This document shows, in pieces, positions 36,060 through 53,419 of a DNA stretch of 64,000 bases. The notes under the pieces are model-generated. The model was not told the DNA's origin. It ran no database searches and worked only from the letters and a program-made list of their open reading frames with translations. Within the stretch, counting starts at the first letter, position 1, and every line of letters begins with the position of its first letter. The translations under genes and the position numbers were made by a program. This DNA is from Octopus sinensis (lineage: Eukaryota), in assembly GCF_006345805.1 (NCBI RefSeq), contig NC_043010.1, forward strand, positions 65,410,001 through 65,474,000, written 5' to 3'.

Positions 36060-36159
36060 NNNNNNNNNNNNNNNNNNNNNNNNNNNNNNNNNNNNNNNNN
36101 NNNNNNNNNNNNNNNNNNNNNNNNNNNNNNNNNNNNNNNNNNNNNNNNNNNNNNNNNNN
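36060..36159. other. Assembly gap (100 N)
   Basis: Run of N; contiguity across it is not guaranteed. Confidence 1.
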
Positions 36160-40162: not shown

Positions 40163-40188
40163 AACTTTTTGCTTTTATTCACTTTCAG
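40163..40188 (+). promoter_or_regulatory. 3' splice acceptor 9 nt upstream of the ATG (implies an upstream exon)
   Basis: aactttttgcttttattcactttcAG|actacaaatATG: pyrimidine tract plus CAG. Confidence 0.55.
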
Positions 40189-40197
40189 ACTACAAAT

Positions 40198-40557
40198 ATG
40201 CAAAGTAAAATATCCGCCATAATTTTGTTCTGGTTGTTGCAATCGTCTGGGCAGGAAACATTGAAAGCAGTGTCAACAGTGGAAACACCCTGCAGTTCAG
40301 ACTGCGAATGTTCTTTAATAGAAATGACTTGTACAGGCAACAACTTAACTTTTCCTTTACTCGTACCACCAAACATTACATCGGTAGTTATCGCTAATTT
40401 GTCACGACCGTATCTGCCATGTGAAGGATTTAATACTTCGAACCGTCTCAACATAACCTTTTTGAACCTGAAGACGACTTCAATGACAGATTGCTTTTTC
40501 GGAAACGTAATAGTTGAGAGACTTTACTTCGAAAAAAGTCGAATTAAAAGGTTTAAG
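40198..40557 (+). CDS. Secreted LRR protein, coding exon 1 (signal peptide, LRRNT, first LRRs)
   Basis: ATG 40198; MQSKISAIILFWLLQSSG|QE reads as a signal peptide; PCSSDCECSLIEMTCTGNNL is an LRRNT CxxxCxC...C cap; N-glycosylation sequons NLT, NIT, NLS, NTS; ends at donor AAG|GTAATC after exactly 120 codons (phase 0). Confidence 0.85.
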
Positions 40558-40593
40558 GTAATCTATTTGAAGCATATTAATATATATATGAAA

Positions 40594-40800
40594 GCGACGA
40601 GCTGGCAGAATCGTGAACACGCCGGAGAAAATGCTTAGCAGCATTTCGTCCGGCCTTAGGTTCTGAGTTAAAATTCTGCTGAGGTCGATTTTGCCTTTCA
40701 TCATTTCGGAGTCGATAAAATAAGTACCAGTCATGTACTGAGGTCGACGTAATCGACTTGACAACCGCCACCCATCCTTATGTCATTGCTGGCCTTGTGC
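40594..40800 (+). mobile_element. SINE family B in intron 1
   Basis: gcgacgagctggcagaatcg... starts about 36 bp after the exon 1 donor. Confidence 0.85.
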
Positions 40801-41436
40801 CAATATGTATATTTATATAAGTGTATGTGTGCGTATGTGTGAATGTGTGCTACACGCATATGTGTGCTGAATGACTGTGTGTGCGTGTGTGTGTTTTGGG
40901 TGTGTATGTATGTGTATGTGTGTACATATGGTGTGCATCTATGTGTGTATTAATGAGAGTAATTATTTAGTTCCGCTGAAAAAGTATTGTCTTCTTCTCT
41001 CAAAGTCAATAGAATTTGTTGTTTGTTAATAACCCTAATCTATTGCTAAGTTTTAAAAGCTTCACCTGACCCTTCAGATTCTTTGACTGAGTCCACACTT
41101 TTGCAAATGTTCGCATCATATATTTCGTCTGAGAATATCTCGATATCCTGATGTGCTACTTCTTACTTCCCTTTTTCTTGTAGTGACAAAGTTTGCTAGA
41201 GAGTAAAATGAGCAGTGGTTTTCCAGCGGAGTCCTACGGGTATCTGTACAAGCGATTCTCGGCCCCGCTTGGGTAAAGCTTCAAGAGGCTCTCTATTTTC
41301 TAGCACATGATATAGGAACAGGCGTGGCCGTGTGGTAGGAAGTCTACTTCCCAACCACATGCTTCCGGGTTCATTCCCACCGCGTAGCACTTTGGTCAAG
41401 TGTCTGTTACTATAGCCTTGGGCCGGCCAAAACCAC

Positions 41437-41468
<32 letters not shown>

Positions 41469-41537
41469 GTTAAATAAAATGAGACAACAAGGCCAAGGTA
41501 GTGTGAAATTTCTAGGACATTTCTAAAGAGAAAAGTA

Positions 41538-41585
41538 GCCTTACAGCTGTTTCAGGAATATGAAGGATATCCCATCATAAGAGGC
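41538..41585 (-). ncRNA. Second copy of the CAGCUG-family hammerhead motif (core G5U), antisense in intron 1
   Basis: GCCU CUUAUGA U-GGGAUAU-CCUUC-AUAUUCC-U GAAA CAGCUG UA AGGC; flank homologous to 11530-11650. Confidence 0.45.
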
Positions 41586-41623
41586 GATATGAGACACTCA
41601 CACACACAGAGGCACACACCCAA

Positions 41624-41655
<32 letters not shown>

Positions 41656-41656
41656 G

Positions 41657-41708
<52 letters not shown>

Positions 41709-41836
41709 TTGCGAGAAAGAGAGCGAAAGTGTGTTTATGTGCATGCATGTATGCGTAGTACCCGCGCTCGCGCATATGTGTACTGACTTATTAAGCCGTG
41801 TGACAAACTGTCCTTTGTATATGTTGTCTACTTCAG

Positions 41837-41981
41837 TGTGCGTCATTCTCGACATCTGAACTGGAATCGTTCCACTTCCACCAAGGACATATTTGGTTTA
41901 TTGAGAGATTTGCTTTCTTCTCTACGTCAATCCGTTATTTTACAATCAGCCAATCGAACATCAAACTCCTGGAAAGCCAAG
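41837..41981 (+). CDS. Secreted LRR protein, coding exon 2 (not in the ORF track in this frame)
   Basis: Acceptor tgtctacttcAG|, donor CAAG|GTAAGT; 145 nt, phase 0 in and phase 1 out; open translation CASFSTSELESFHFHQGHIWFIERFAFFSTSIRYFTISQSNIKLLESQ has LRR periodicity and bridges the phases of exons 1 and 3. Confidence 0.85.
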
Positions 41982-42081
41982 GTAAGTAGCTTAATTCAAA
42001 TAAATATGTATATACGTGTGTGTGTGTGTGTGTTGTGTGTGTGTGTGTGTCTTCCAGCGTGTGACCGTATCTATAAATGTA

Positions 42082-42645
42082 TTGGGTTATCCGGAAAGTT
42101 CGTGCCGATTTATAGTAGCTTATCTTTCGACTTATTTTAGAATATGCTTGAGTCCATAAAATAGGATTTGACTACACCTCCAGTTAGAGCACAGTTTAAC
42201 CTATCTTTTCGTGGAAGAAGGTTTATGTTCCTATAACTTGTTTTAATTCTGTAACCCTTTAAAATGGAAGTTCATTTTCGGTACTTGTTGCTTTTCTTTT
42301 TCCGTAAAGGGAAAAATGTCTCACAAGCAATCAAAGAAATATGCGCAGTTTACGGTGATGTTTCTTTATCCGAAAAAACTGTACGGAAGTGGTTCGCAAG
42401 GTTCCGAGCTGGAGATTGTAGCCTTATTGATAAAGAGCGATCAGGCAGACCATCCACTACAGACGATGACCAAATCAAGTTATTAATTGAGAATAACCCA
42501 CATTGCACAACCCGAGAATTGGCAGAAAGCCTCAACCTATCAAAATCCGTCGTTCATGAGCACCTGGTAAAGCTTGGGTAAGGCAAGTATTTATTGACCT
42601 TTTTCTTTCCTTTAAAAATCGGTACGAACTTTCCGGACAAGTCAA
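42082..42645 (+). mobile_element. Internally deleted mariner with both 30-bp TIRs and TA target duplication
   Basis: TIRs 42082-42111 and 42616-42645 (26/30 identical), TA on both sides; ORF 42264-42581 is a mariner N-terminal HTH region (TVRKWFARFRAGDCSLIDKERSGRP); catalytic domain absent. Confidence 0.9.
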
Positions 42646-43428
42646 TATATATGTGTGCGTATCTGTATTTCTGCTATAATGATGTCTGTGTATGGTTAAT
42701 TGAGTTTGCATGTATTCAGATGTGTTAGCATCCAGGATACTATTTCTTCTGATTGGCTGCAAATAGTGACAAGACCGGTAACTCTGTCTGTGGGGCGCAT
42801 AAGCACTTCATCGATACTATCAATGGTTGCCTAAAAAGCATGTATATCAAACCATTCGTGGTAGTATATTGGAATTGAGAGACCCAGCTAGCACAAGGTG
42901 TACCAAACCGTTTAAGAAAACAAAGATCAGTCAAGCTAAGCAGAAGAAGGAGCTATGGAAGTCCAGATCCGCAAACTCATAGAGTTCAAACTACGTTTGT
43001 TCAATTGATGGTTTCGCTCTCCAAACACATCGTCAGCATTCTTTGAACCTATCAGCGATGCCATGAGTATTATCGTGTGGATTGGCGAACAAGAAACTAT
43101 TCGTATCAACAAACCTGTGCTGCGCTGAGTCCAAGACCAAATCATGCGGAGTCGAGTTTCTTTCAATTTCTGTCTACCAAATCTACTAACAAAACTTTGA
43201 ATGGCTCGAAGCTATAAGACATTTGCCCAAAGTGCAACGCAGTAGAACTGAACCCGAAACCAAATGGTTAGGAAGCAAACTTCTTACCACTGAGACACGC
43301 CTGTACTTATCAATATTATTTTCTATTTCCTTTTATTTATTATATTTACGTTTTTTACTGTACTCATTTATTTATTCGCTATCATTATTTTTGTTCCTGT
43401 TATTATTCATTCTTGTTACAAATAAATG

Positions 43429-43462
<34 letters not shown>

Positions 43463-43477
43463 TATTATTATTATTAT

Positions 43478-43659
43478 TTACTTTTTATCTGCATGTTTGT
43501 TACAATCTCTCGCCGAGACACACACCCAACGTCCTGGTGTGAGTGAAGAACAAGAGATTGTTATTATTATTATTATTATTTACTTTTTATCTGCATGTTT
43601 GTTACAATCTCTCGCCGAGACACACACCCAACGTCCTGGTGTGAGTGAAGAACAAGAGA

Positions 43660-43660
<1 letters not shown>
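43478..43660. repeat. Exact tandem duplication, 102-bp period, embedded in (TTA)n
   Basis: Cores 43478-43558 and 43580-43660 identical. Confidence 0.9.
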
Positions 43661-43728
<68 letters not shown>

Positions 43729-43961
43729 GACGATACACTGACATTTCATCCGATTAGTTTTGTTCTGAGTTCAATCCCGCCTGGTTCAACTTTGCCCGTC
43801 GTTTTCCAGGGGTGATAAAATAAAGCAACTAACCCCTTCCCTCAAAATTGCTATCCTTGTATCAAAATTAGAAAGAGTTACTACAAATTTAAGCCATTTG
43901 CCTTTTTTTTATTCATTTTATATAATTCTCATTTATTTGTAAAACAAATTCATCTACTTAT

Positions 43962-44192
43962 TTTAGTTTACTCTCTCTTTTACTTGTTTCAGTCATTTCA
44001 CTGCGGCCATGCTGGAGCACCGCCTTTAGTCGAGCAAATCGACCCCGGGACTTATTCTTTGCAAGCCCAGTACTTATTCTATCGGTCTCTTTTGCCGAAC
44101 CACTAAGTGACGGGGACGTTAACACACCAGCATCGGTTGTCAAGCAATGCTAGGGGGACAAACACAGGCACACAAACATATACACACACACG

Positions 44193-44232
<40 letters not shown>

Positions 44233-45038
44233 TATATACGACAGGCTTCTTTCAGTTTCTGTCTACCAAATCCACTCACAAGGCATTGGTCGGCCCGGGG
44301 CAATAGCAGAAGACACTTGCCCAAGATGCCACGCAGTGGGACTGAACCCGGAACCATGTGGTTGGTTAGCAAGCTACTTGTTTAATTTATATTTATTAAT
44401 TTTTTTTTTTATCTTTTATATTTATTAATTTCAAATTTTGGCACATGGTCAAACATTTCGGGAGAAGGCTCAAGTCGATTACATCGACCCCCAGTGCCCA
44501 ACCGCTACTTATTTTATCGACCCCGAAAGGATGAAGGACAAAGTCGATTTTCACAGAATTTGAACTCAGAAAACAACGACAAACGAAAATACCGCAAAGC
44601 ATTTTGTCCGCGGGCAAACGATTCTGCCAGCTCCCTGCTTTATTTATTATATTACTCTTTTAATTGTTTCAGTCATTTGACTGCGGCCATGCTGGAGCAC
44701 CGCCTTTAGTCGATCAAATCGACCCCAGGACTTATTCTTTGTAAGCCTCGTACTTATTCTATCGGTCTATTTTGCCGAACCGCTAAGTTACGGGGACGTA
44801 ACCACATCAGCATCGCTTGTCAAGCGATGCTGGGGGGACAAACACGGAGACACAAACATGTATATATATATACGACGGGCTTCTTTCAGTTTCCGTCTAC
44901 TAAATCCACTTACAAGGCTTTGGTCGGCCCGAGGCTATAGTAGAAGACACTTGCCCAAGGTGCTACGCAGTGGGACTGAACCCAGAACCATGTGATTGGT
45001 ACGCAAGCTACTTACTACACAGCCACTCCTGCGCCTAT
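43962..45038 (-). mobile_element. SINE cluster in intron 2: family A (43962-44381), family B (44445-44635), family A (44650-45038)
   Basis: Direct match to the family consensus seen elsewhere in the window. Confidence 0.9.
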
Positions 45039-45061
45039 TATTATTAATAATTATTTCACCA

Positions 45062-45255
45062 ACCGTATTTTCCGCCATACAAGTCGACGTATTCCATAGC
45101 GTATACGTGCAGCATACCATTCAAACATTGTCACTATCTTTCCAAATCCTACTGCAATTTCACATGGAATTTTTCGTCCTTCAAAGTCGTCTCAGAGTAT
45201 AAGTCGACCAAGCTTTTTTAGCTGTAAATTTCGGCTTGAAAAATTCGACTTACGG
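45062..45255. mobile_element. Pogo/Tigger-like non-autonomous DNA transposon fragment
   Basis: accgtattttccgccatacaagtcgac end resembles pogo-type TIRs; internal repeat gtataagtcgac. Confidence 0.4.
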
Positions 45256-45265
45256 AGATGTACTC

Positions 45266-45446
45266 GCATAGCAAGTGATTTGATCCGAGATCGTGTGCTG
45301 GATGAGATGCAGCACGGATTCTTGTCAGTGAACAGGTCGCGGATTTTAGCGACGAAAATATTTTGACAAATTAAACTTAAATGTTGAAGTTAATCGAATG
45401 GCTTTTGTATGTTTCTTAAATGGCTTACAAACACCTACCACGCTGC
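45266..45446. mobile_element. Single-unit relative of the 126-635 element (probable non-autonomous DNA element) just 5' of exon 3
   Basis: Shares cacggatt..gtcagtgaacaggtcg, aaatattttgacaaatt and ccacgctgcaa blocks with 444-585. Confidence 0.6.
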
Positions 45447-45538
45447 AAAATTCGACTTGTATACCGGAAAATACGCTACATTATCTATTGTATATATATA
45501 TATATCTTACCTATATTTTTACTTACATATCTCCACAG

Positions 45539-45836
45539 CTTTCCACCAAGCAAACATAGAGGTATTTCAGCTGATTCATTGCAATGTGTCCACCTTGGAA
45601 CCGGGTTTGTTTTCGGGCGATGATTACCTCAGTAAGAATGTGGTCTTCCAAGGAAATACAATCGCCGATTTGGGATGTCAGGAGAAACCTGTATTCTCCT
45701 TTATCGAGAATCGGCTGATATGTAACAAAAGATTGTCTTGGCTTTCTGCGCACAATATTTCAAACAACAGGTGCTACCTTCTGTCTGAATCACGTGAAAT
45801 ACCTGTCAATAGGAGATATCTGAAGAGCATCTGCCG
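45539..45836 (+). CDS. Secreted LRR protein, coding exon 3 (LRRs plus LRRCT-like cap)
   Basis: Acceptor acatatctccacAG| (phase 1, G+CT=Ala); (A)FHQANIEVFQLIHCNVSTLEPGLF...FIENRLICNKRLSWL...RCYLL...SIC; donor CG|GTAGGA (phase 2) just before the in-frame TAG. Confidence 0.8.
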
Positions 45837-46479
45837 GTAGGATATTACTCTTAGTTCTCCTGTGTTTCCTTGAAGTCTTTAACGACGACCACGACGACGA
45901 CGGCCGCCACCACCACCACCACCACCATCATCACTGCGATGATGACTATGCTGATGATGATGATGATGATGATGACTATGATGATGATGGTGATGGTGAC
46001 GATGAGGACAACAATGATAATGATTATCCAGCTATGTTTTACTTAATGTATGTGTGTGTGTGTGTGCCCGAATATGTATGCGTGTGTATGGAGCCAAATG
46101 TATACGCATGCGCATGTCAATGTATACCTACATGCATATATTGTTGTTACTGCTGTTGTTATTGTTGTTGCAGTAGTTCACGCCGCCATCGTCGTCGACG
46201 TCGTCAATGATGTTGTTGTTGTTGTTGTTGCTTAGTCCCAGGTCAGCCTTTTCGTACAAACACCTACGACCAAAAGAATACGAACCAGACCCCACCCTGT
46301 CATTTTTTTTTTCAGCATCACATACAGTCTTTTCTACTCTAGGCACAAGGCCAAAAATTTTGGTGGGAGGTGCTATTTGATTAGATCGACCCCAGTACGC
46401 AACTGGTACTTAATTTATCGACCTGACCGCATAACAAACTTGTTAACAACACTGTCATGTTGCATTTGTCCATATTTTA

Positions 46480-46672
46480 CATCGGTTGAGACTTGAGTCT
46501 GATCTCTGTCTTACACCTCCACCTAGCAATAAAATACAAACCATTATATAGGGATACCAGTGGCCTGTCTGAATAAATGAGTCCCGCGACGTGGAGAGGC
46601 TTCTACGGCGAGTGTCACTAGCCATTCTCCGTGGCAACGCCGTCGCGGTCATGACCGACGGGTCCGGTTAGG
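46480..46672 (+). mobile_element. CRE-clade-like RLE LINE C-terminal relic in intron 3
   Basis: ERLLRRVSLAILRGNAVAVM* matches the LxQRLSxAIQRGNA terminal motif; decayed FTSVET upstream. Confidence 0.55.
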
Positions 46673-47938
46673 CACACCATTTGATGCGGGGAGTTGTGAG
46701 TTCAAATTCCGCCGAGGTCGACTATGCCTTTCATCCTTTCGGGGTCGATAAATTAAGTACCAGTTACGCACTGGGGTCGATGTAATCGACTTAATACCTA
46801 TGTCTGTCCTTGTTTGTCCCCTCTGTGTTTAGCCCCTTGTGGGTAATAAAGAAATAGGTATGTGGCCCGTATGTGTTCCATCGCTCCCTCCAACTCCATC
46901 TTCTGCTGCTTTACCCCCCCCCGCCATTTTATTTATTTTTTCCTTGTATTTCTTTTCCTTTTTATCACTCGGTTTTTCTTTTCTTGTCTTTTTGTAATTA
47001 AATGTTATAAATAAATTTTTTTTTCGGTGTCCACAAAGAGAACTGTTCGCGGTCTTATAAATTCAATGGATTGTATTAGCTTACAGAATTATTAGGGCGT
47101 CAGGAAAAAAAGGGATTCGCAGTATCTCTTCTGGTTCTTTACATTCTAAGTTCAAATCCCCTCGAGGCTAACTTTTATCCCCCCCCCCTCACACCGTGGC
47201 AGATAAAATAACGTACCAGTTTCCCACCGAGTTTAATGGTACTGAATGACCCCACTCCTCCCTTCAAGATTACTGGAAATGTGACTAAATCAGAAAGGAA
47301 GGGGTTTATTAAACAGATAGTGGATATTTTTTTGTTGCTGTCCAGAAAACCTTGTTTGTTTTTAGGTATATATCTTAGGAGAGCATCACAGCTCACCAAG
47401 CAAAAACTCAACAGGTAACATTCCAGCAAATGCCACAAATTAGCAACTGCTAACATTCACGCAAACACACATACACACATACACACACACACACTCACAT
47501 ACATACTCACACATATATATACACACATATATATATACACAGAAACATATACATATATATATATATATATATACACGCACACATAAACACACGCATATAT
47601 ATACAAACATATACACATACACACACATATACTCACACATCTATACATATACACACTCACACATATATACACACATATACACGCACATATAATACACATA
47701 TACACGCATATATATATATATATATACACAAACATATATGCACGCATATACACACATCTATATATATATATTATATATATATATATACATGTATACAAAC
47801 ACATATATAAACATATATACACACACACATTCACATACACACCTACATGCACACATATATATACACAAACATATATATACACAGACATATACACACACAT
47901 GCACGCACACACATACACACACATATATATACACATTA

Positions 47939-48171
47939 TTTTTCTTTACTACCCACAAGGGGCTAAACACAGAGAGGACAAACAAGGAGAGACAAAGAGA
48001 TTAAGTCAATTATATCGACCCCAGTGCGTACCTGGTATTTATTTAATCGACCCCGAAAGGATTAAAGGCAAAGTCGACCACGGCGGAATTTGAACTCGGA
48101 ACGTAACGGCAGACGAAATACCGCTAAGCATTTCGCCCAGCATGCTAACGTTTCTGCCAGCTCGCCGCCTT
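47939..48171 (-). mobile_element. tRNA-derived SINE family B (MetaSINE/Sauria-like central domain), full length
   Basis: Head ggcggcgagctggcagaa...gagttcaaattcc, then gccgaggtcgactttgcctttcatcctttcggggtcgataaattaagtaccag, which resembles the Meta/Sauria SINE core as I recall it. Other copies at about 9570-9712(+), 10826-11045(-), 14260-14662(-, two), 46340-46425(-), 46696-46858(+), 51441-51620(+). Confidence 0.85.
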
Positions 48172-48316
48172 ATATACACATTTATACACATTCATCCACA
48201 TATATATATATACACACACACACATGTACACATTCACATTGATATACACACACACGCACGCTCACATACACACACACACATACACATTTAGTTCGTACTT
48301 GCTATATTAATACTTA

Positions 48317-48536
48317 CTGGCAGAGACGTTAGCACGCCGGGCGAAGTGCTTCGTGGTATTTCGCCCGTCGCTACGTTCTGAGTTCAAATTCCGCCGAGAT
48401 CGACTTTTCTTTCATCCTTTCGGGGTCGATCAATTAAGTACCAGTTACGCACTGGGGTCGATGTAATCGACTTAATCCGTCTGTCTGTCCTTGTTTGTCC
48501 CCTCTATGTTTAGCCCCTTGTGGGTAATAAAGAAAC
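48317..48536 (+). mobile_element. SINE family B, inverted relative to 47939-48171
   Basis: Head-to-head with the preceding copy, about 145 bp apart. Confidence 0.9.
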
Positions 48537-48688
48537 ATATAATACTTGCTATGTTGTGACACTTGGTGAAAATGTCACTTATTGAGCTTTTACTTGCCGG
48601 GGTTAAGGTGAAATCCTATTCCAGATATATTTTGATGTTTCTTGACTATAATCTTCCTTTTTTATTTTATTTTATTTTATCTTCTCAG

Positions 48689-50318
48689 TCCTCGCGGTAG
48701 TTGCCATGTTTGTCCAGTGAAAAACGTATTTTTGTCTAAAAGTGGCTGTCGTGCTGTACCCCGAAATATGATTGAAAAATTTGAACAGCTGTCTCTGTGG
48801 CGAGAAATCTTACGGAAGAATAACATCACAGCAGAAAATTTACAGTGTGTACAACATCCATCTAGCAAATGTGCTGGTGAAAGAAAGTACCAAAATCTTC
48901 AACAGTTTTTCATGCATTACAACGGTTTGAAGAAAAAAATCACATACTTCCGGGACAGAAGTATTCGGAAGGCTTCAAAGTTTTTGAGAAGTGGAAAGAA
49001 TAGTAACGTGACGTCGATTAACAATAAAACTATTGTTACTAATCCCAATGTTACTGATTCGCTTTCTACGAGAAAGAGGAAACAGTTTAGCAAAATTATT
49101 CCTACTACGACAGGTAGGAGAATAAATAATATCCCTTTGGAACCACTGTTGAAGTTATTGAGAAAACCCTTACCGAAAAAGATCAAGGTTACTAAACAAA
49201 AGGAAGCCGTTGACGATATCAAAGCTGCTTATAGAAGAGGATTACCTCGACGAAAGAGTTCCCATCCTCGGCCTCAGAAAGTATTGAGAAAACCCTTACC
49301 GAAAAAGATCAAGGTTACTAAACACAAGGAAGCTGTTGACGATATCAAAGCCGCTTATAGAAAAGGATTACCTCAACGAAAGAGTTCCCATCCTCGGCCT
49401 CAGAAAGTAAACTTTCCATGGAGAAATATTCAAATTCGAGTGCAACAACAGCATCGCATGCAATATTTGCTTCAAGCTGAACAAACCTGGAAACATGCTC
49501 AGCCAAATAGAATTGATACACCATCTCAAAAATCTAAAAGATTAAAACGTCAACAAGCGGACTGGAAACAGACATCGAATTGGTTGACGAAATACGCCGC
49601 CACACAAGCCCCCAACATTCAAAATTATGTTCAACTGAAATTAATATCACAAAATAAACGTTTGGAGAATAGTTCCGCAATTCCCCTTCCCGAGTCATGT
49701 GAAGTTGCGTTTTTCTTGCCTTTTTCTTCAAAAAGATTTGGAATTTGCGAAGACTTTTCAGACGGAACATCAAATATTATTTATCCGGAAACACTTCAAG
49801 ATTATGAGTACAAGGTATATTTAGAAACCCTTAAAGATAGACTAAGGACTAACATATCTTCCCCTTATCCAAAATTGAAACTGATCAAACGAAGTGGAGT
49901 CAATGCTGCTCAAAGCCAGCCAAAATCCCAGCAAACGAACAGTCCTTCTGCCTTACAGCATGGGAAAAAGAATATGAAAACACCAAAACATTTGAAAAAG
50001 ACAGCCAAACTATTTTTATTAAATTTGGGGTCTAAATTAAGCAGTAAGAACAACAGCAGTCTTTTTTCACTTTTGGCATCATTTCTGCACAAGATGAATA
50101 ACCTGAATAACACGAGTAATGAAACTTTAAAGAATAATTTTGATTTGAAAAAATCAGTGTCATGGATAAAAATGTCGTCTGCAAATAAGCTTAATTCCTC
50201 TCAGAAAAATAAGAAACAGAACGAAGTTAAGAGACAAAAGTGGGGAGGCATATTATCGAAGTTGAGCGGATACTTTAAGCAGTCGCAAGGTAATTTGACT
50301 TCAGCTAATCGCCAATGA
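48689..50318 (+). CDS. Secreted LRR protein, terminal exon 4 (Cys-containing linker plus long basic low-complexity tail)
   Basis: Long T-rich tract and cttctcAG| acceptor (phase 2, CG+T=Arg) fits the exon 3 donor; 1630 nt open to TGA 50316-50318; free of microsatellites and SINEs in a window otherwise saturated with them; AATAAA at 50355-50360. Confidence 0.85.
49158..49409 (+). repeat. Coding tandem duplication, 2 x 126 bp (42 aa)
   Basis: LRKPLPKKIKVTK(Q/H)KEAVDDIKAAYR(R/K)GLP(R/Q)RKSSHPRPQKV; copies at 49158-49283 and 49284-49409 differ at 5 nt. Confidence 0.95.
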
Positions 50319-50354: not shown

Positions 50355-50360
50355 AATAAA
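50355..50360 (+). terminator. Candidate polyadenylation signal of the LRR gene
   Basis: AATAAA 37 nt after the stop; repeat-free sequence continues to about 51430, so a longer 3' UTR using a later signal is possible. Confidence 0.4.
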
Positions 50361-52287: not shown

Positions 52288-53419
52288 TAGGGGTTGGACA
52301 AAATAATGGAAACACCTTAAAATTTCAAACAAATTTATTTTAATGCGGGATAGGACCGCCTTTGGCAGTAATTACTGCTTCAATTCTACGAGGTACGGAC
52401 TCCGTACAAAGTTTGAATTGTTTCCAAAGGATTTTGTCCATTCTTCAACTAAAACAGTCTCCAGTTCTTGTAATGAGGATGATAGAGGATATCGACTCCT
52501 TACTTGTTTTTCTAAAATGCACCATAAATGTTCAATAATATTGAGTTCTGGGGACTGTGGTGGTAAGATAAGATACTGAACTTCACTAGAATGTTCTTCG
52601 TGTTCAGATAAAATGCTTAAATAGTCTAGACTATAAATTCTGCCAAGAAGGGAAACCATTGGGCCGGCGGATTTCCATGATATAGCCCCGCCCAGATCAT
52701 CACAGACCCTCCTCCATATTTAACAGTTGGAAGAAGGCAGTCTGGGTCAAATGATTCTTTCGGCTGTCTCCACACGTATACTTGGCCGGTTGTCGGAAAT
52801 AAGGTAAAGGATGACACCCCGAGAAAATAACTTTCTTCCACGGCTCTAGGGACCAATTCTGTGAGTTTTTACTCCACTCTAAACGCTTTGCAACATCTGT
52901 TTTTGAATGTAGTCGTTTTCTGATTGCAGCTCTCATGTGAAATCCAACTTTGTGCAGCTCCCGGCGACCAATTTTTGTGGAAACCGGGTTCTCGAGGTCA
53001 TTAAGCTCCGCAGTAATTTTGGAAGCTGTACTTTTGTGATCCTTTCTAACAATTCGCGTAAGAGACCGACGGTCCCTATCTGAAAATTTTGGTTTTCTTT
53101 CGGAGTTTTGTTTCGACAAGGAGGTTTTTCCTTATTTCCCAAAGGCTGTCATTACTTTCGAGACAGTACTTCTAGTGTCTGCCATACGAGCGCCAACAAT
53201 TTGACCTCTTTGAAAGTCCGATAGATCTGTCATTTTAATGAATTTTAATTACCTATTTCTGATATCTGAAAAGAAAAAGCAATTTTAGCAAAACATATTA
53301 AGCAACACTAATAATAGATCAAAAAACATAAAAATAAACAAGCTTTTGACGGTTTAATAGATATTTCAAAATTATGATGCTATGATGCTAGGTGTTTCCA
53401 TTATTTTGTCCAATTCTTG
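52288..53419 (-). mobile_element. Tc1-like DNA transposon, frameshifted
   Basis: TIR core ttggacaaaataatggaaacacct at both ends within TA runs; WKKVIFS, ESSFTLF, TVKYGGGSVMIW and PPQSPELNIIEHLW motifs across three frames. Confidence 0.9.

What the first reader, a model, noticed from the sequence alone, without database searches (positions are those of the whole stretch)
40198..50318. Four-exon, 810-aa secreted LRR protein with a 540-aa cationic tail and no membrane anchor
Seen: four exons join with GT-AG sites and matching phases (0, 1, 2) into one 2433-nt frame; exon 2 is invisible in the ORF track. Architecture is signal peptide, LRRNT, about six non-canonical LRRs rich in F/I/V, an LRRCT-like cap, a Cys-rich linker (CHVC...C...C...C), and a long K/R/S/N/Q-rich tail. 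I see no hydrophobic transmembrane, GPI, TIR, Ig or kinase segment. Known: LRRNT-LRR-LRRCT ectodomains bind ligands in receptors and matrix proteins. Inferred: a soluble LRR module fused to a basic, probably disordered effector; I do not recognise this architecture, so it may be lineage-restricted (gland secretion, egg coat, skin or immune).
Basis: partly seen in the sequence, partly recalled or inferred. Interest (0 to 1): 0.75.

Follow-up and report, generated by a model that had tools for sequence, protein, structure and literature searches.

The report
Octopus LRR protein with cationic tail
This is a real octopus gene, already in RefSeq as an uncharacterised protein, that joins an ordinary extracellular leucine-rich-repeat binding domain to a long, fast-evolving, strongly positive tail found only in Octopus; it is a modest curiosity, not a new kind of system.

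Summary
The four exons, GT-AG junctions, phases and 810-aa frame are exactly as described. They match residues 41-850 of Octopus sinensis RefSeq XP_036365303.1 (LOC118766127, 850 aa). The window is 100% identical to that assembly. RefSeq adds two small coding exons about 50 kb upstream, outside the window, so the start codon is uncertain.

No Pfam LRR model detects residues 30-290. Even so, they are a divergent member of a mollusc family of capped LRR ectodomains (hhalign probability 99%, E 2.7e-18). With that family as the alignment, AlphaFold2 gives a 23-residue-period solenoid (pLDDT above 90 across both internal junctions). Its best structural match is the Nogo receptor ectodomain.

Five of the six relatives scored end in a hydrophobic GPI/TM-like segment after an acidic or neutral stalk. 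The octopus protein instead has a roughly 515-aa tail (pI about 10.6, net charge +78) with no anchor and no homologue outside three Octopus species.

The tail changes at a near-neutral rate (dN/dS 0.86; LRR domain 0.45). Its frame is nevertheless kept open: 9.6 stops are expected, none is observed, and the only indels are in-frame.

Most likely it is a secreted LRR binder held on polyanionic material by its tail; this function is inferred, not tested.

The parts
40189..40557 (+). An acceptor at 40188/40189 is followed by 9 nt (TTN) and the ATG at 40198. It encodes the signal-like segment (aa 1-19, 40198-40254), the LRRNT Cys cluster (aa 32-45, 40291-40332) and LRR1 to the first half of LRR3.
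   Evidence: The acceptor and its polypyrimidine tract are conserved in O. vulgaris and O. bimaculoides. The exon is 100% and 87% identical in amino acids to those species. dN/dS against O. bimaculoides is 0.39.
41837..41981 (+). Coding exon of 145 nt (phase 0 in, phase 1 out). It encodes the second half of LRR3 to the first half of LRR5.
   Evidence: The exon is present in O. vulgaris at 99.5% nt identity. In O. bimaculoides its position falls in an assembly gap. Both of its junctions are collinear, without gaps, with uninterrupted gastropod homologues. Both lie in AlphaFold2 blocks with pLDDT 85-97.
45539..45836 (+). Coding exon of 298 nt. It encodes the second half of LRR5 to LRR7 and the LRRCT-like cap (C215, C230, C247, C267).
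   Evidence: The O. bimaculoides copy is 301 nt (one extra codon) with AG/GT kept. dN/dS is 0.53.
48689..50318 (+). Last coding exon of 1630 nt. It encodes the post-cap Cys linker (aa 269-329, 48690-48872), the polybasic tail and the stop codon (50316-50318).
   Evidence: The O. bimaculoides RefSeq protein XP_014772096.1 uses the same exon 3/exon 4 junction. Tail dN/dS is 0.86 (95% bootstrap interval 0.59-1.29). None of 5000 neutral simulations keeps the frame open. The only indels against O. bimaculoides are 3 and 126 nt.
49156..49409 (+). Two tandem in-frame copies of a 126-nt unit. Each encodes the 42-aa repeat LRKPLPKKIKVTK...HPRPQKV.
   Evidence: Tandem Repeats Finder: period 126, 2.0 copies, 96% matches. 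Both copies are present in O. vulgaris; O. bimaculoides has one.
49608..49835 (+). Best-conserved island of the tail (aa 575-650). It is locally acidic or neutral and contains C605 and C621.
   Evidence: Identity to O. bimaculoides is 90% in the 30-residue windows starting at 575-605, falling to 77-83% in the windows starting at 620-635. On the charge-hydropathy plot, aa 591-660 falls on the folded side.
48888..48980 (+). Most variable stretch of the tail (aa 335-365), about 50% identical to O. bimaculoides.
   Evidence: The overlapping 60-codon block has 26.5 nonsynonymous and 1.5 synonymous differences. This is not significant once nine blocks are allowed for.
50355..50360 (+). AATAAA 37 nt after the stop codon, a candidate polyadenylation signal.
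   Evidence: The evidence is weak, because the hexamer occurs 163 times in the window.

Best explanation
Shown. This is gene LOC118766127 of Octopus sinensis. Its product has two parts that evolve differently.
- Part 1 (aa about 30-290) is a disulfide-capped extracellular LRR solenoid of about seven 23-residue repeats. It is a divergent member of a mollusc family whose members mostly carry a short stalk and a C-terminal hydrophobic GPI/TM-like signal.
- Part 2 (aa about 295-810) is an Octopus-restricted tail with net charge +78. Its sequence changes at a near-neutral rate, but its reading frame is maintained.

Inferred. The protein enters the secretory pathway and is released, because it has no anchor. 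The concave face of the LRR binds a protein or glycan ligand. The polycationic tail replaces the lost lipid anchor with an electrostatic tether, holding the LRR module on polyanionic material such as sulfated mucus or matrix glycans, egg-coat or gland secretions, or microbial surfaces. On this view selection acts on the tail's length, openness and charge rather than on its exact sequence.
For: Gene model:
- It is identical to the RefSeq protein.
- The full CDS is intact in O. vulgaris. Exons 1, 3 and 4, with their splice sites, are intact in O. bimaculoides.

LRR module:
- HMMER gives E 3e-6 to 1e-3 against Haliotis, Aplysia and Lymnaea proteins.
- Profile-profile comparison gives probability 99.0%, E 2.7e-18, over 222 columns.
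- The cap cysteines are invariant in the family alignment.
- AlphaFold2 with that alignment gives pTM 0.70, with pLDDT above 90 over mature residues 21-170 and two strands every 23 residues.
- The best Foldseek hits are the Nogo receptor, LRRTM2, biglycan, SALM and Slitrk ectodomains.

Loss of the anchor and change of charge:
- Five of six relatives have a C-terminal 15-residue Kyte-Doolittle mean above 2.0 and stalks with pI 4.1-6.0.
- The octopus C-terminus scores -0.15 and its tail has pI 10.7.

Tail is coding but loosely constrained:
- 9.6 stops are expected under neutral change; 0 of 5000 simulations stay open.
- Indels are in-frame only, against 5-12 per kb in the flanks.
- dN/dS is 0.86 for the tail and 0.45 for the LRR domain.
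- Net charge is +65 versus +66 over 473 aligned residues despite 108 replacements.

Extracellular location: disulfide caps and 20 N-x-S/T sequons.

Precedent: PRELP is an LRR protein with a basic glycosaminoglycan-binding end that acts as an anchor protein (PMC2806584).
Against: - No expression, secretion or binding data could be reached. No paper mentions the gene.
- The signal peptide was judged from hydropathy and the small residues at -3/-1 only. RefSeq starts 40 residues upstream at an ATG in a strong context, which would make that hydrophobic segment internal.
- Conservation of charge is not significantly better than neutral simulation predicts (58.7 +/- 6.7; P = 0.14).
- Substitutions in the tail are spread evenly over codon positions (54/56/49). 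That is also what a sequence of little functional importance would show.
- The tail contains few classical heparin-binding motifs (three XBBXBX, one XBBBXXBX).
Confidence: 0.45

Rival explanations
1. Humoral immune molecule. The LRR module recognises microbial patterns, as mollusc LRR-only proteins do. The cationic tail binds or damages negatively charged microbial envelopes. Fast change in the tail would reflect an arms race.
For: - Scallop LRR-only proteins bind LPS, peptidoglycan, glucan and poly I:C (PMC5877582).
- The tail's nonsynonymous rate (0.109) exceeds that of the flanking non-coding DNA (0.081; Fisher P = 0.010).
- One 60-codon block has dN/dS of 4.7.
- There are basic, helix-compatible stretches near the C-terminus.
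Against: - No homology to the scallop proteins was tested.
- dS in the tail is also high (0.137), so overall dN/dS is 0.86, with an interval that includes 1.
- The high-dN/dS block is not significant after correction for nine blocks.
- The strongest 18-residue amphipathic windows are hydrophilic and often contain proline.
- There are no expression or induction data.
Confidence: 0.2
2. The tail has little function. An ancestral stalk-plus-anchor exon lost its anchor signal and grew by drift and duplication. Only the LRR module matters, and the long open frame is a young, tolerated extension.
For: - dN/dS is near 1, and substitutions are even across codon positions.
- Nucleotide identity of exon 4 (89.2%) is no higher than that of the intron and 3' flank (92.1% and 91.8%).
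- There is a recent 126-nt duplication.
- Stalk length and composition vary widely among relatives.
Against: - The frame has stayed open in three species, although 9.6 stops are expected from the observed divergence (0 of 5000 simulations).
- All indels are multiples of three.
- Conserved islands reach 90% identity.
- Base composition differs by codon position (P = 8e-6).
Confidence: 0.1
3. Precursor that is cut at basic sites into smaller secreted peptides, for example a C-terminal peptide after the conserved KR at aa 784-785.
For: - Basic sites are conserved between O. sinensis and O. bimaculoides: RKRK at aa 396-399, RLKR/RFKR at 552-555 and KR at 784-785.
- The last 40 residues are 87% conserved.
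Against: - Basic doublets are expected by chance in a sequence with 20% K+R.
- Only one R-x-K/R-R site lies in the tail.
- An LRR domain is not a usual part of peptide precursors (established knowledge).
- No repeated peptide units flanked by cleavage sites were found.
Confidence: 0.05
4. Not secreted. Translation from the upstream RefSeq ATG buries the hydrophobic segment, and the K/R-rich protein stays in the cytosol or nucleus.
For: - The upstream ATG has A at -3 and G at +4, and extends the frame by 40 codons.
- The tail is rich in basic clusters that resemble nuclear-localisation signals.
Against: - LRRNT- and LRRCT-type cysteine caps are features of extracellular LRR proteins (established knowledge). 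They are conserved here and in relatives that have N-terminal signals.
- There are 20 N-glycosylation sequons.
- The 40-residue extension itself begins with a hydrophobic, signal-like stretch.
- All homologues start directly with the signal sequence.
Confidence: 0.05

Closest known systems
Unnamed mollusc family of capped LRR proteins: Haliotis cracherodii XP_071102431.1 ('LRRC15-like'), Haliotis rubra XP_046551556.1 ('slit homolog 3-like'), Aplysia californica XP_035829740.1 ('slit homolog 2'), Lymnaea stagnalis CAL1528216.1
   Same: - Signal sequence and a C-x3-C-x-C-x6-7-C N-cap.
- About seven 23-24-residue repeats with the I-x-x-I-x-x-x-A-F core.
- A C-cap followed by one more cysteine pair.
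- The alignment is collinear, and profile comparison gives probability 99%.
   Different: - Identity is only 20-28%.
- The relatives are detected by Pfam LRR_5 and LRR_8; the octopus protein is not.
- Five of six relatives end in a hydrophobic GPI/TM-like segment after an acidic or neutral stalk. The octopus protein has a basic tail of about 515 aa and no such ending.
- The Haliotis and Aplysia genes hold almost the whole CDS in one exon, whereas the octopus LRR domain is split by three introns.
Nogo receptor (RTN4R) and similar vertebrate LRRNT-LRR-LRRCT ectodomains (LRRTM2, Slitrk, SALM, LGR4)
   Same: - Best structural matches to the predicted model: 5o0m_B with E 3.3e-4 and probability 1.00.
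- Same capped-solenoid plan, followed by an unstructured stalk.
   Different: - TM-scores are only 0.37-0.45 and sequence identity 10-17%.
- The sequence E-value is 0.29, which is not significant.
- There are fewer and shorter repeats.
- There is no GPI signal, transmembrane segment or Ig domain.
PRELP and chondroadherin (small leucine-rich repeat proteins with a basic glycosaminoglycan-binding end)
   Same: - A secreted LRR domain with an N-terminal cysteine cluster, joined to a basic extension that binds polyanions and anchors the protein in matrix (PMC2806584). This is the working analogy for the mechanism.
- Biglycan and chondroadherin appear among the structural hits.
   Different: - The vertebrate basic ends are short (tens of residues; from established knowledge), against about 515 aa here.
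- No sequence homology was found.
- The number and type of repeats differ.
- Binding was not tested for the octopus protein.
Scallop LRR-only pattern-recognition proteins (CfLRRop-1 to -6)
   Same: Mollusc proteins that contain LRRs and no other known domain; most of the recombinant proteins bind microbial polymers (PMC5877582).
   Different: - Their sequences were not compared here.
- They are described as having 1-4 LRR domains and no long tail.

Membership tests
Mollusc capped LRR family (Haliotis, Aplysia and Lymnaea relatives) | N-terminal signal sequence followed by the cap C-x3-C-x-C-x6-7-C | tested here: met
   C32, C36, C38 and C45 are invariant columns in the 7-sequence alignment A1.
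Mollusc capped LRR family (Haliotis, Aplysia and Lymnaea relatives) | About seven 23-24-residue repeats with an I-x-x-I-x-x-x-A-F core, collinear over the whole domain | tested here: met
   hhalign gives probability 99.0%, E 2.7e-18, over 222 aligned columns. F101, F124, I142, A146 and F147 are invariant. The AlphaFold2 model has a 23-residue strand periodicity.
Mollusc capped LRR family (Haliotis, Aplysia and Lymnaea relatives) | C-terminal cap cysteines plus a further Cys pair just after the cap | tested here: met
   C230 and C288 are invariant, and C247 and C267 align with family cysteines. Confidence in the model of this part is only pLDDT 51-77.
Mollusc capped LRR family (Haliotis, Aplysia and Lymnaea relatives) | Acidic or neutral stalk ending in a hydrophobic C-terminal (GPI/TM-like) segment | tested here: not met
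   Relatives have a C-terminal KD15 of 2.0-2.4 and stalk pI of 4.1-6.0. The octopus values are KD15 -0.15 and pI 10.7. One relative (P0003) also lacks this segment, so it is typical of the family but not universal.
Pfam LRR models (LRR_8, LRR_5, LRR_4, LRRNT, LRRCT) | A match at or above the gathering score | tested here: not met
   No LRR model matches, even at E up to 10. The relatives match LRR_8 and LRR_5 at 1e-11 to 1e-27.
Nogo receptor (RTN4R) family | Significant sequence similarity to the RTN4R ectodomain | tested here: inconclusive
   phmmer against PDB gives E 0.29-0.41. Foldseek gives E 3.3e-4 with TM 0.40-0.44.
Nogo receptor (RTN4R) family | C-terminal GPI-anchor signal | tested here: not met
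   The C-terminus is hydrophilic. No dedicated GPI predictor was available.
Small leucine-rich repeat proteins (PRELP, chondroadherin, biglycan) | Sequence homology and the 10-12-repeat domain typical of the class | tested here: not met
   There is no significant sequence hit. The model has about seven repeats. These proteins resemble it only in fold.
Small leucine-rich repeat proteins (PRELP, chondroadherin, biglycan) | Basic end that binds heparin or heparan sulfate | not testable with these tools
   Only composition is known: net charge +78 and pI 10.6. A binding assay is needed.
Toll-like receptors | Transmembrane segment and cytoplasmic TIR domain | tested here: not met
   No TIR domain in Pfam. 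The highest 19-residue hydropathy mean is 1.44.
Slit (the automatic name given to two relatives) | Four LRR modules followed by EGF, laminin-G and a cystine knot | tested here: not met
   One LRR module only, and Pfam finds no other domain.

The most novel reading that the evidence does not exclude
The roughly 515-residue tail is a coding sequence that arose within the Octopus lineage. Selection keeps only its openness, length and positive charge. It converted a GPI-anchored cell-surface LRR protein into a secreted one that tethers itself electrostatically to polyanions, or attacks them, in mucus, an egg coat, a gland secretion or a microbial surface. Parts of it would be under positive selection.
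Probability: 0.15. Interest if true: 0.55.

Novelty: new variant of a known kind. Interest (0 to 1): 0.3.

Why it matters
The practical gain is in annotation. The same gene is truncated in two of the three octopus genome annotations: an assembly gap hides exon 2 in O. bimaculoides, and only the last 468 codons were called in O. vulgaris. In all three the LRR domain is invisible to Pfam. Two things are now clear:
- The domain belongs to a mollusc-wide family.
- The octopus protein differs from that family by exchanging the membrane anchor for a long polycation.

If the tail proves functional, the gene would be a clean small example of a lineage-specific, loosely constrained extension changing where a conserved binding module acts. 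It would also be a candidate component of an octopus secretion. It does not bear on any long-standing open question.

Tried and rejected
- **Pfam.** Scanning the whole product and the tail gave nothing above noise: DUF2540 at E 0.067 and Tox-URI2 at E 0.072, both far below their cut-offs.
- **PDB sequence search of the tail.** No hit at E up to 10.
- **Single-sequence AlphaFold2.** Unusable, with pLDDT 37.6.
- **Word-indexed search with the family alignment.** It returned only generic LRR proteins and missed even its own input sequences.
- **Word-indexed search with the 294-aa N-terminal part.** No hit.
- **First full-length search.** It hid the identical RefSeq protein, because that protein sits inside a 90% cluster represented by the shorter O. 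vulgaris protein. It surfaced only when the cluster members were listed.
- **Paralogues in the window.** None.
- **tRNA-derived elements.** None called.
- **Literature search by gene and protein identifiers.** Nothing.
- **Charge conservation against neutral simulation.** Not significant, P = 0.14.
- **Positive selection.** Suggested by one block and by dN exceeding the flank rate. I do not claim it, because dS is also high and only two divergent sequences are available.
- **AATAAA after the stop codon.** Too common in this AT-rich DNA to count as evidence.
- **Shared intron positions with the Haliotis and Aplysia relatives.** None; those genes are essentially single-exon.

Full report
**1.

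The four segments 40198-40557, 41837-41981, 45539-45836 and 48689-50318 each have an AG before them and a GT after them; the first starts at an ATG and the last ends at a stop. They join in phases 0, 1 and 2 into 2433 nt, encoding 810 residues with no internal stop. The last exon lies in by far the longest open frame of the window. A 543-codon open frame at this base composition has a chance probability of about 8e-18.

**2. The gene is already modelled in RefSeq, with two more exons**

The first protein search returned only two truncated octopus proteins:
- CAI9733291.1 of O. vulgaris, 468 aa, covering part of exon 4 only.
- XP_014772096.1 of O. bimaculoides, 522 aa, covering the end of exon 3 plus exon 4.

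Listing the members of the first cluster revealed XP_036365303.1, 'uncharacterized protein LOC118766127 [Octopus sinensis]', 850 aa.

The window is 100% identical to that assembly (GCA_006345805.1, CM016872.1) over the 52,318 nt held. The window therefore comes from O. sinensis.

The RefSeq CDS has six coding exons. Two small exons (49 and 62 nt, with proper splice sites) lie about 10 kb and 7.6 kb upstream of the window start.

The upstream ATG has a strong context (A at -3, G at +4). Which ATG is used therefore remains open.

**3. Independent support for the junctions**

- O. vulgaris carries the same intact 2433-nt CDS with every splice site preserved.
- O. bimaculoides keeps exons 1, 3 and 4 with their splice sites. 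Exon 3 has one extra codon, and its RefSeq protein uses the same exon 3/exon 4 junction.
- Exon 2 of O. bimaculoides falls exactly in a 318-N assembly gap just after a microsatellite. That explains why its model is truncated.
- In the alignment with gastropod homologues, the sequence runs through all three junctions. The first two are crossed without any gap. The Haliotis and Aplysia homologues hold nearly their whole coding sequence in one exon.
- The AlphaFold2 model is confident (pLDDT 85-97) across the first two junctions.
- The family-conserved cysteines after the C-cap lie in exon 4, which ties exon 4 to exon 3.

**4. The N-terminal module**

Pfam finds no LRR model, even at E up to 10. 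Sequence search of PDB gives only E 0.2-0.4 against a lamprey variable lymphocyte receptor and the Nogo receptor.

A full HMMER search of 1.84 billion representative proteins gave 12 hits to residues 22-290, at E 3e-6 to 9e-4. The best are from Haliotis, Aplysia and Lymnaea. These proteins match Pfam LRR_5 and LRR_8. They share the following plan with the octopus protein:
- a signal sequence;
- a C-x3-C-x-C-x6-7-C cap;
- about seven 23-24-residue repeats with an I-x-x-I-x-x-x-A-F core;
- a C-cap, and one further cysteine pair.

Comparison of the octopus profile with the mollusc profile gives probability 99.0%, E 2.7e-18, over 222 columns.

With this family as the alignment, AlphaFold2 gives pTM 0.70, with pLDDT above 90 for mature residues 21-170. 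The model has two strands every 23 residues, and confidence is lower in the C-cap. A single-sequence run failed.

The best Foldseek matches are the Nogo receptor (E 3.3e-4), LRRTM2, biglycan, SALM, Slitrk1, LGR4 and chondroadherin. All are capped extracellular LRR domains, with TM-scores of about 0.4.

The module, however, is not lineage-restricted.

**5. The tail**

Residues from about 295 to 810 have no match in Pfam, in PDB, or in the representative library outside the Octopus cluster.

Composition:
- From residue 271 on, the sequence is 13.5% K, 10% S, 8% N, 7% Q and 7% R.
- Net charge is +78 and pI is 10.6.

There is no hydrophobic segment. The highest 19-residue hydropathy mean in the whole protein is 1.44 and lies in the LRR region. 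The last 40 residues reach only -0.15.

Five of the six relatives scored end in a hydrophobic segment (2.0-2.4) after stalks with pI 4.1-6.0. One of these is a 330-residue acidic stalk in Lymnaea. The octopus protein thus looks like the family plan with three changes: the variable stalk is enlarged, it has turned basic, and the anchor signal is gone.

The tail is not uniform:
- Residues 575-635 are 90% identical to O. bimaculoides, contain two cysteines and fall on the folded side of a charge-hydropathy plot.
- Residues 335-365 and 530-560 are only about 50% identical.
- A 126-nt in-frame tandem duplication (49156-49409) is present in O. sinensis and O. vulgaris but single in O. bimaculoides.

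**6. Two evolutionary regimes**

| Comparison | LRR domain | Tail |
|---|---|---|
| dN/dS against O. bimaculoides | 0.45 (bootstrap 0.26-0.87) | 0.86 (0.59-1.29) |
| Nonsynonymous / synonymous differences against O. vulgaris | 1 / 5 | 8 / 2 |

- Tail substitutions are spread evenly over codon positions (54/56/49).
- Exon 4 is no more conserved at the nucleotide level (89.2%) than intron 1 (92.1%) or the 3' flank (91.8%).
- The frame is nevertheless protected. With the observed number and spectrum of substitutions, 9.6 stop codons are expected, and none of 5000 simulations stays open.
- The only indels in exon 4 are 3 and 126 nt, while the flanks carry 5-12 indels per kb, mostly not multiples of three.
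- Net charge is +65 against +66 over 473 aligned residues despite 108 replacements. This is not significantly better than neutral expectation (P = 0.14).
- The nonsynonymous rate in the tail exceeds the flanking non-coding rate (P = 0.010). Because dS is also high, I do not claim positive selection.

**7. Mechanism**

Shown: a capped extracellular-type LRR domain; no detectable anchor or other domain; and a polybasic tail that is kept open but only loosely constrained in sequence.

Inferred: the protein is secreted, the LRR binds a ligand, and the tail holds the protein on polyanionic material in place of the lipid anchor its relatives use. The working analogy is PRELP, an LRR protein whose basic end binds glycosaminoglycans and anchors it in matrix (PMC2806584).

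The main rival is an immune role, with recognition by the LRR, as for scallop LRR-only proteins (PMC5877582), and a cationic tail acting on microbes. Lesser rivals are a functionless tail, a peptide precursor and an intracellular protein. None of these can be settled without expression and binding data, which these tools do not provide. No paper mentions the gene.

**8. Verdict**

Three corrections apply:
- The gene is already a RefSeq model with two further 5' exons.
- The LRR module belongs to a mollusc-wide family.
- The tail has conserved islands.

It is a new variant of a well-known kind of protein and is of modest interest. Its main immediate value is in correcting and explaining three inconsistent annotations.

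Noticed in passing
L001 8502-8819 (O. bimaculoides CM046614.1); corresponds to window about 41660-43460: A 318-N assembly gap directly after an (AT)n microsatellite covers the place where exon 2 should be. That is why RefSeq XP_014772096.1 starts at a Met inside exon 3.
   Followed up: yes
L002 2338-11407 (O. vulgaris OX597827.1): The complete four-exon 2433-nt CDS is intact in O. vulgaris, but the deposited annotation (CAI9733291.1) calls only the last 468 codons, starting at an internal Met.
   Followed up: yes
L006 2001-2049 and 4577-4638 (upstream of the window start): Two small RefSeq coding exons about 50 kb 5' of the LRR exons add 40 residues. The added stretch is itself hydrophobic and signal-like. 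Its conservation in other octopuses could not be checked.
   Followed up: partly
window 42264-42581 (+), inside intron 2: A fragment of a mariner/Mos1-type transposase (Pfam HTH_48, E 1.2e-20).
   Followed up: partly
window 52700-53119 (-): A fragment of a Tc1/Tc3-type transposase (Pfam HTH_Tnp_Tc3_2, E 9.8e-10), downstream of the gene.
   Followed up: partly
window 40591-40758, 46693-46791, 48317-48472: A short interspersed repeat of about 100-170 nt occurs in introns 1 and 3. It has several further copies (80-92% identity) elsewhere in the O. vulgaris and O. bimaculoides loci. ARAGORN calls no tRNA in it.
   Followed up: partly
L004 and L005 (Haliotis cracherodii and Aplysia californica loci): These two gastropod relatives have almost their whole CDS in one exon, while three introns interrupt the octopus LRR domain. 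The introns were therefore either gained in the octopus line or lost in gastropods.
   Followed up: partly
P0006 (Logan assembly, organism unknown): One relative carries two complete cap-LRR-cap modules in tandem before its stalk and hydrophobic end.
   Followed up: no
window 36060-36159: A run of 100 N (scaffold gap) next to a (GATA)n-type microsatellite.
   Followed up: no
whole window: AATAAA occurs 163 times against 117 +/- 10 expected from shuffles, largely inside (AATA)n-type simple repeats. Much of the window is microsatellite-rich, with many spurious C/Y/I/H-rich ORFs.
   Followed up: no
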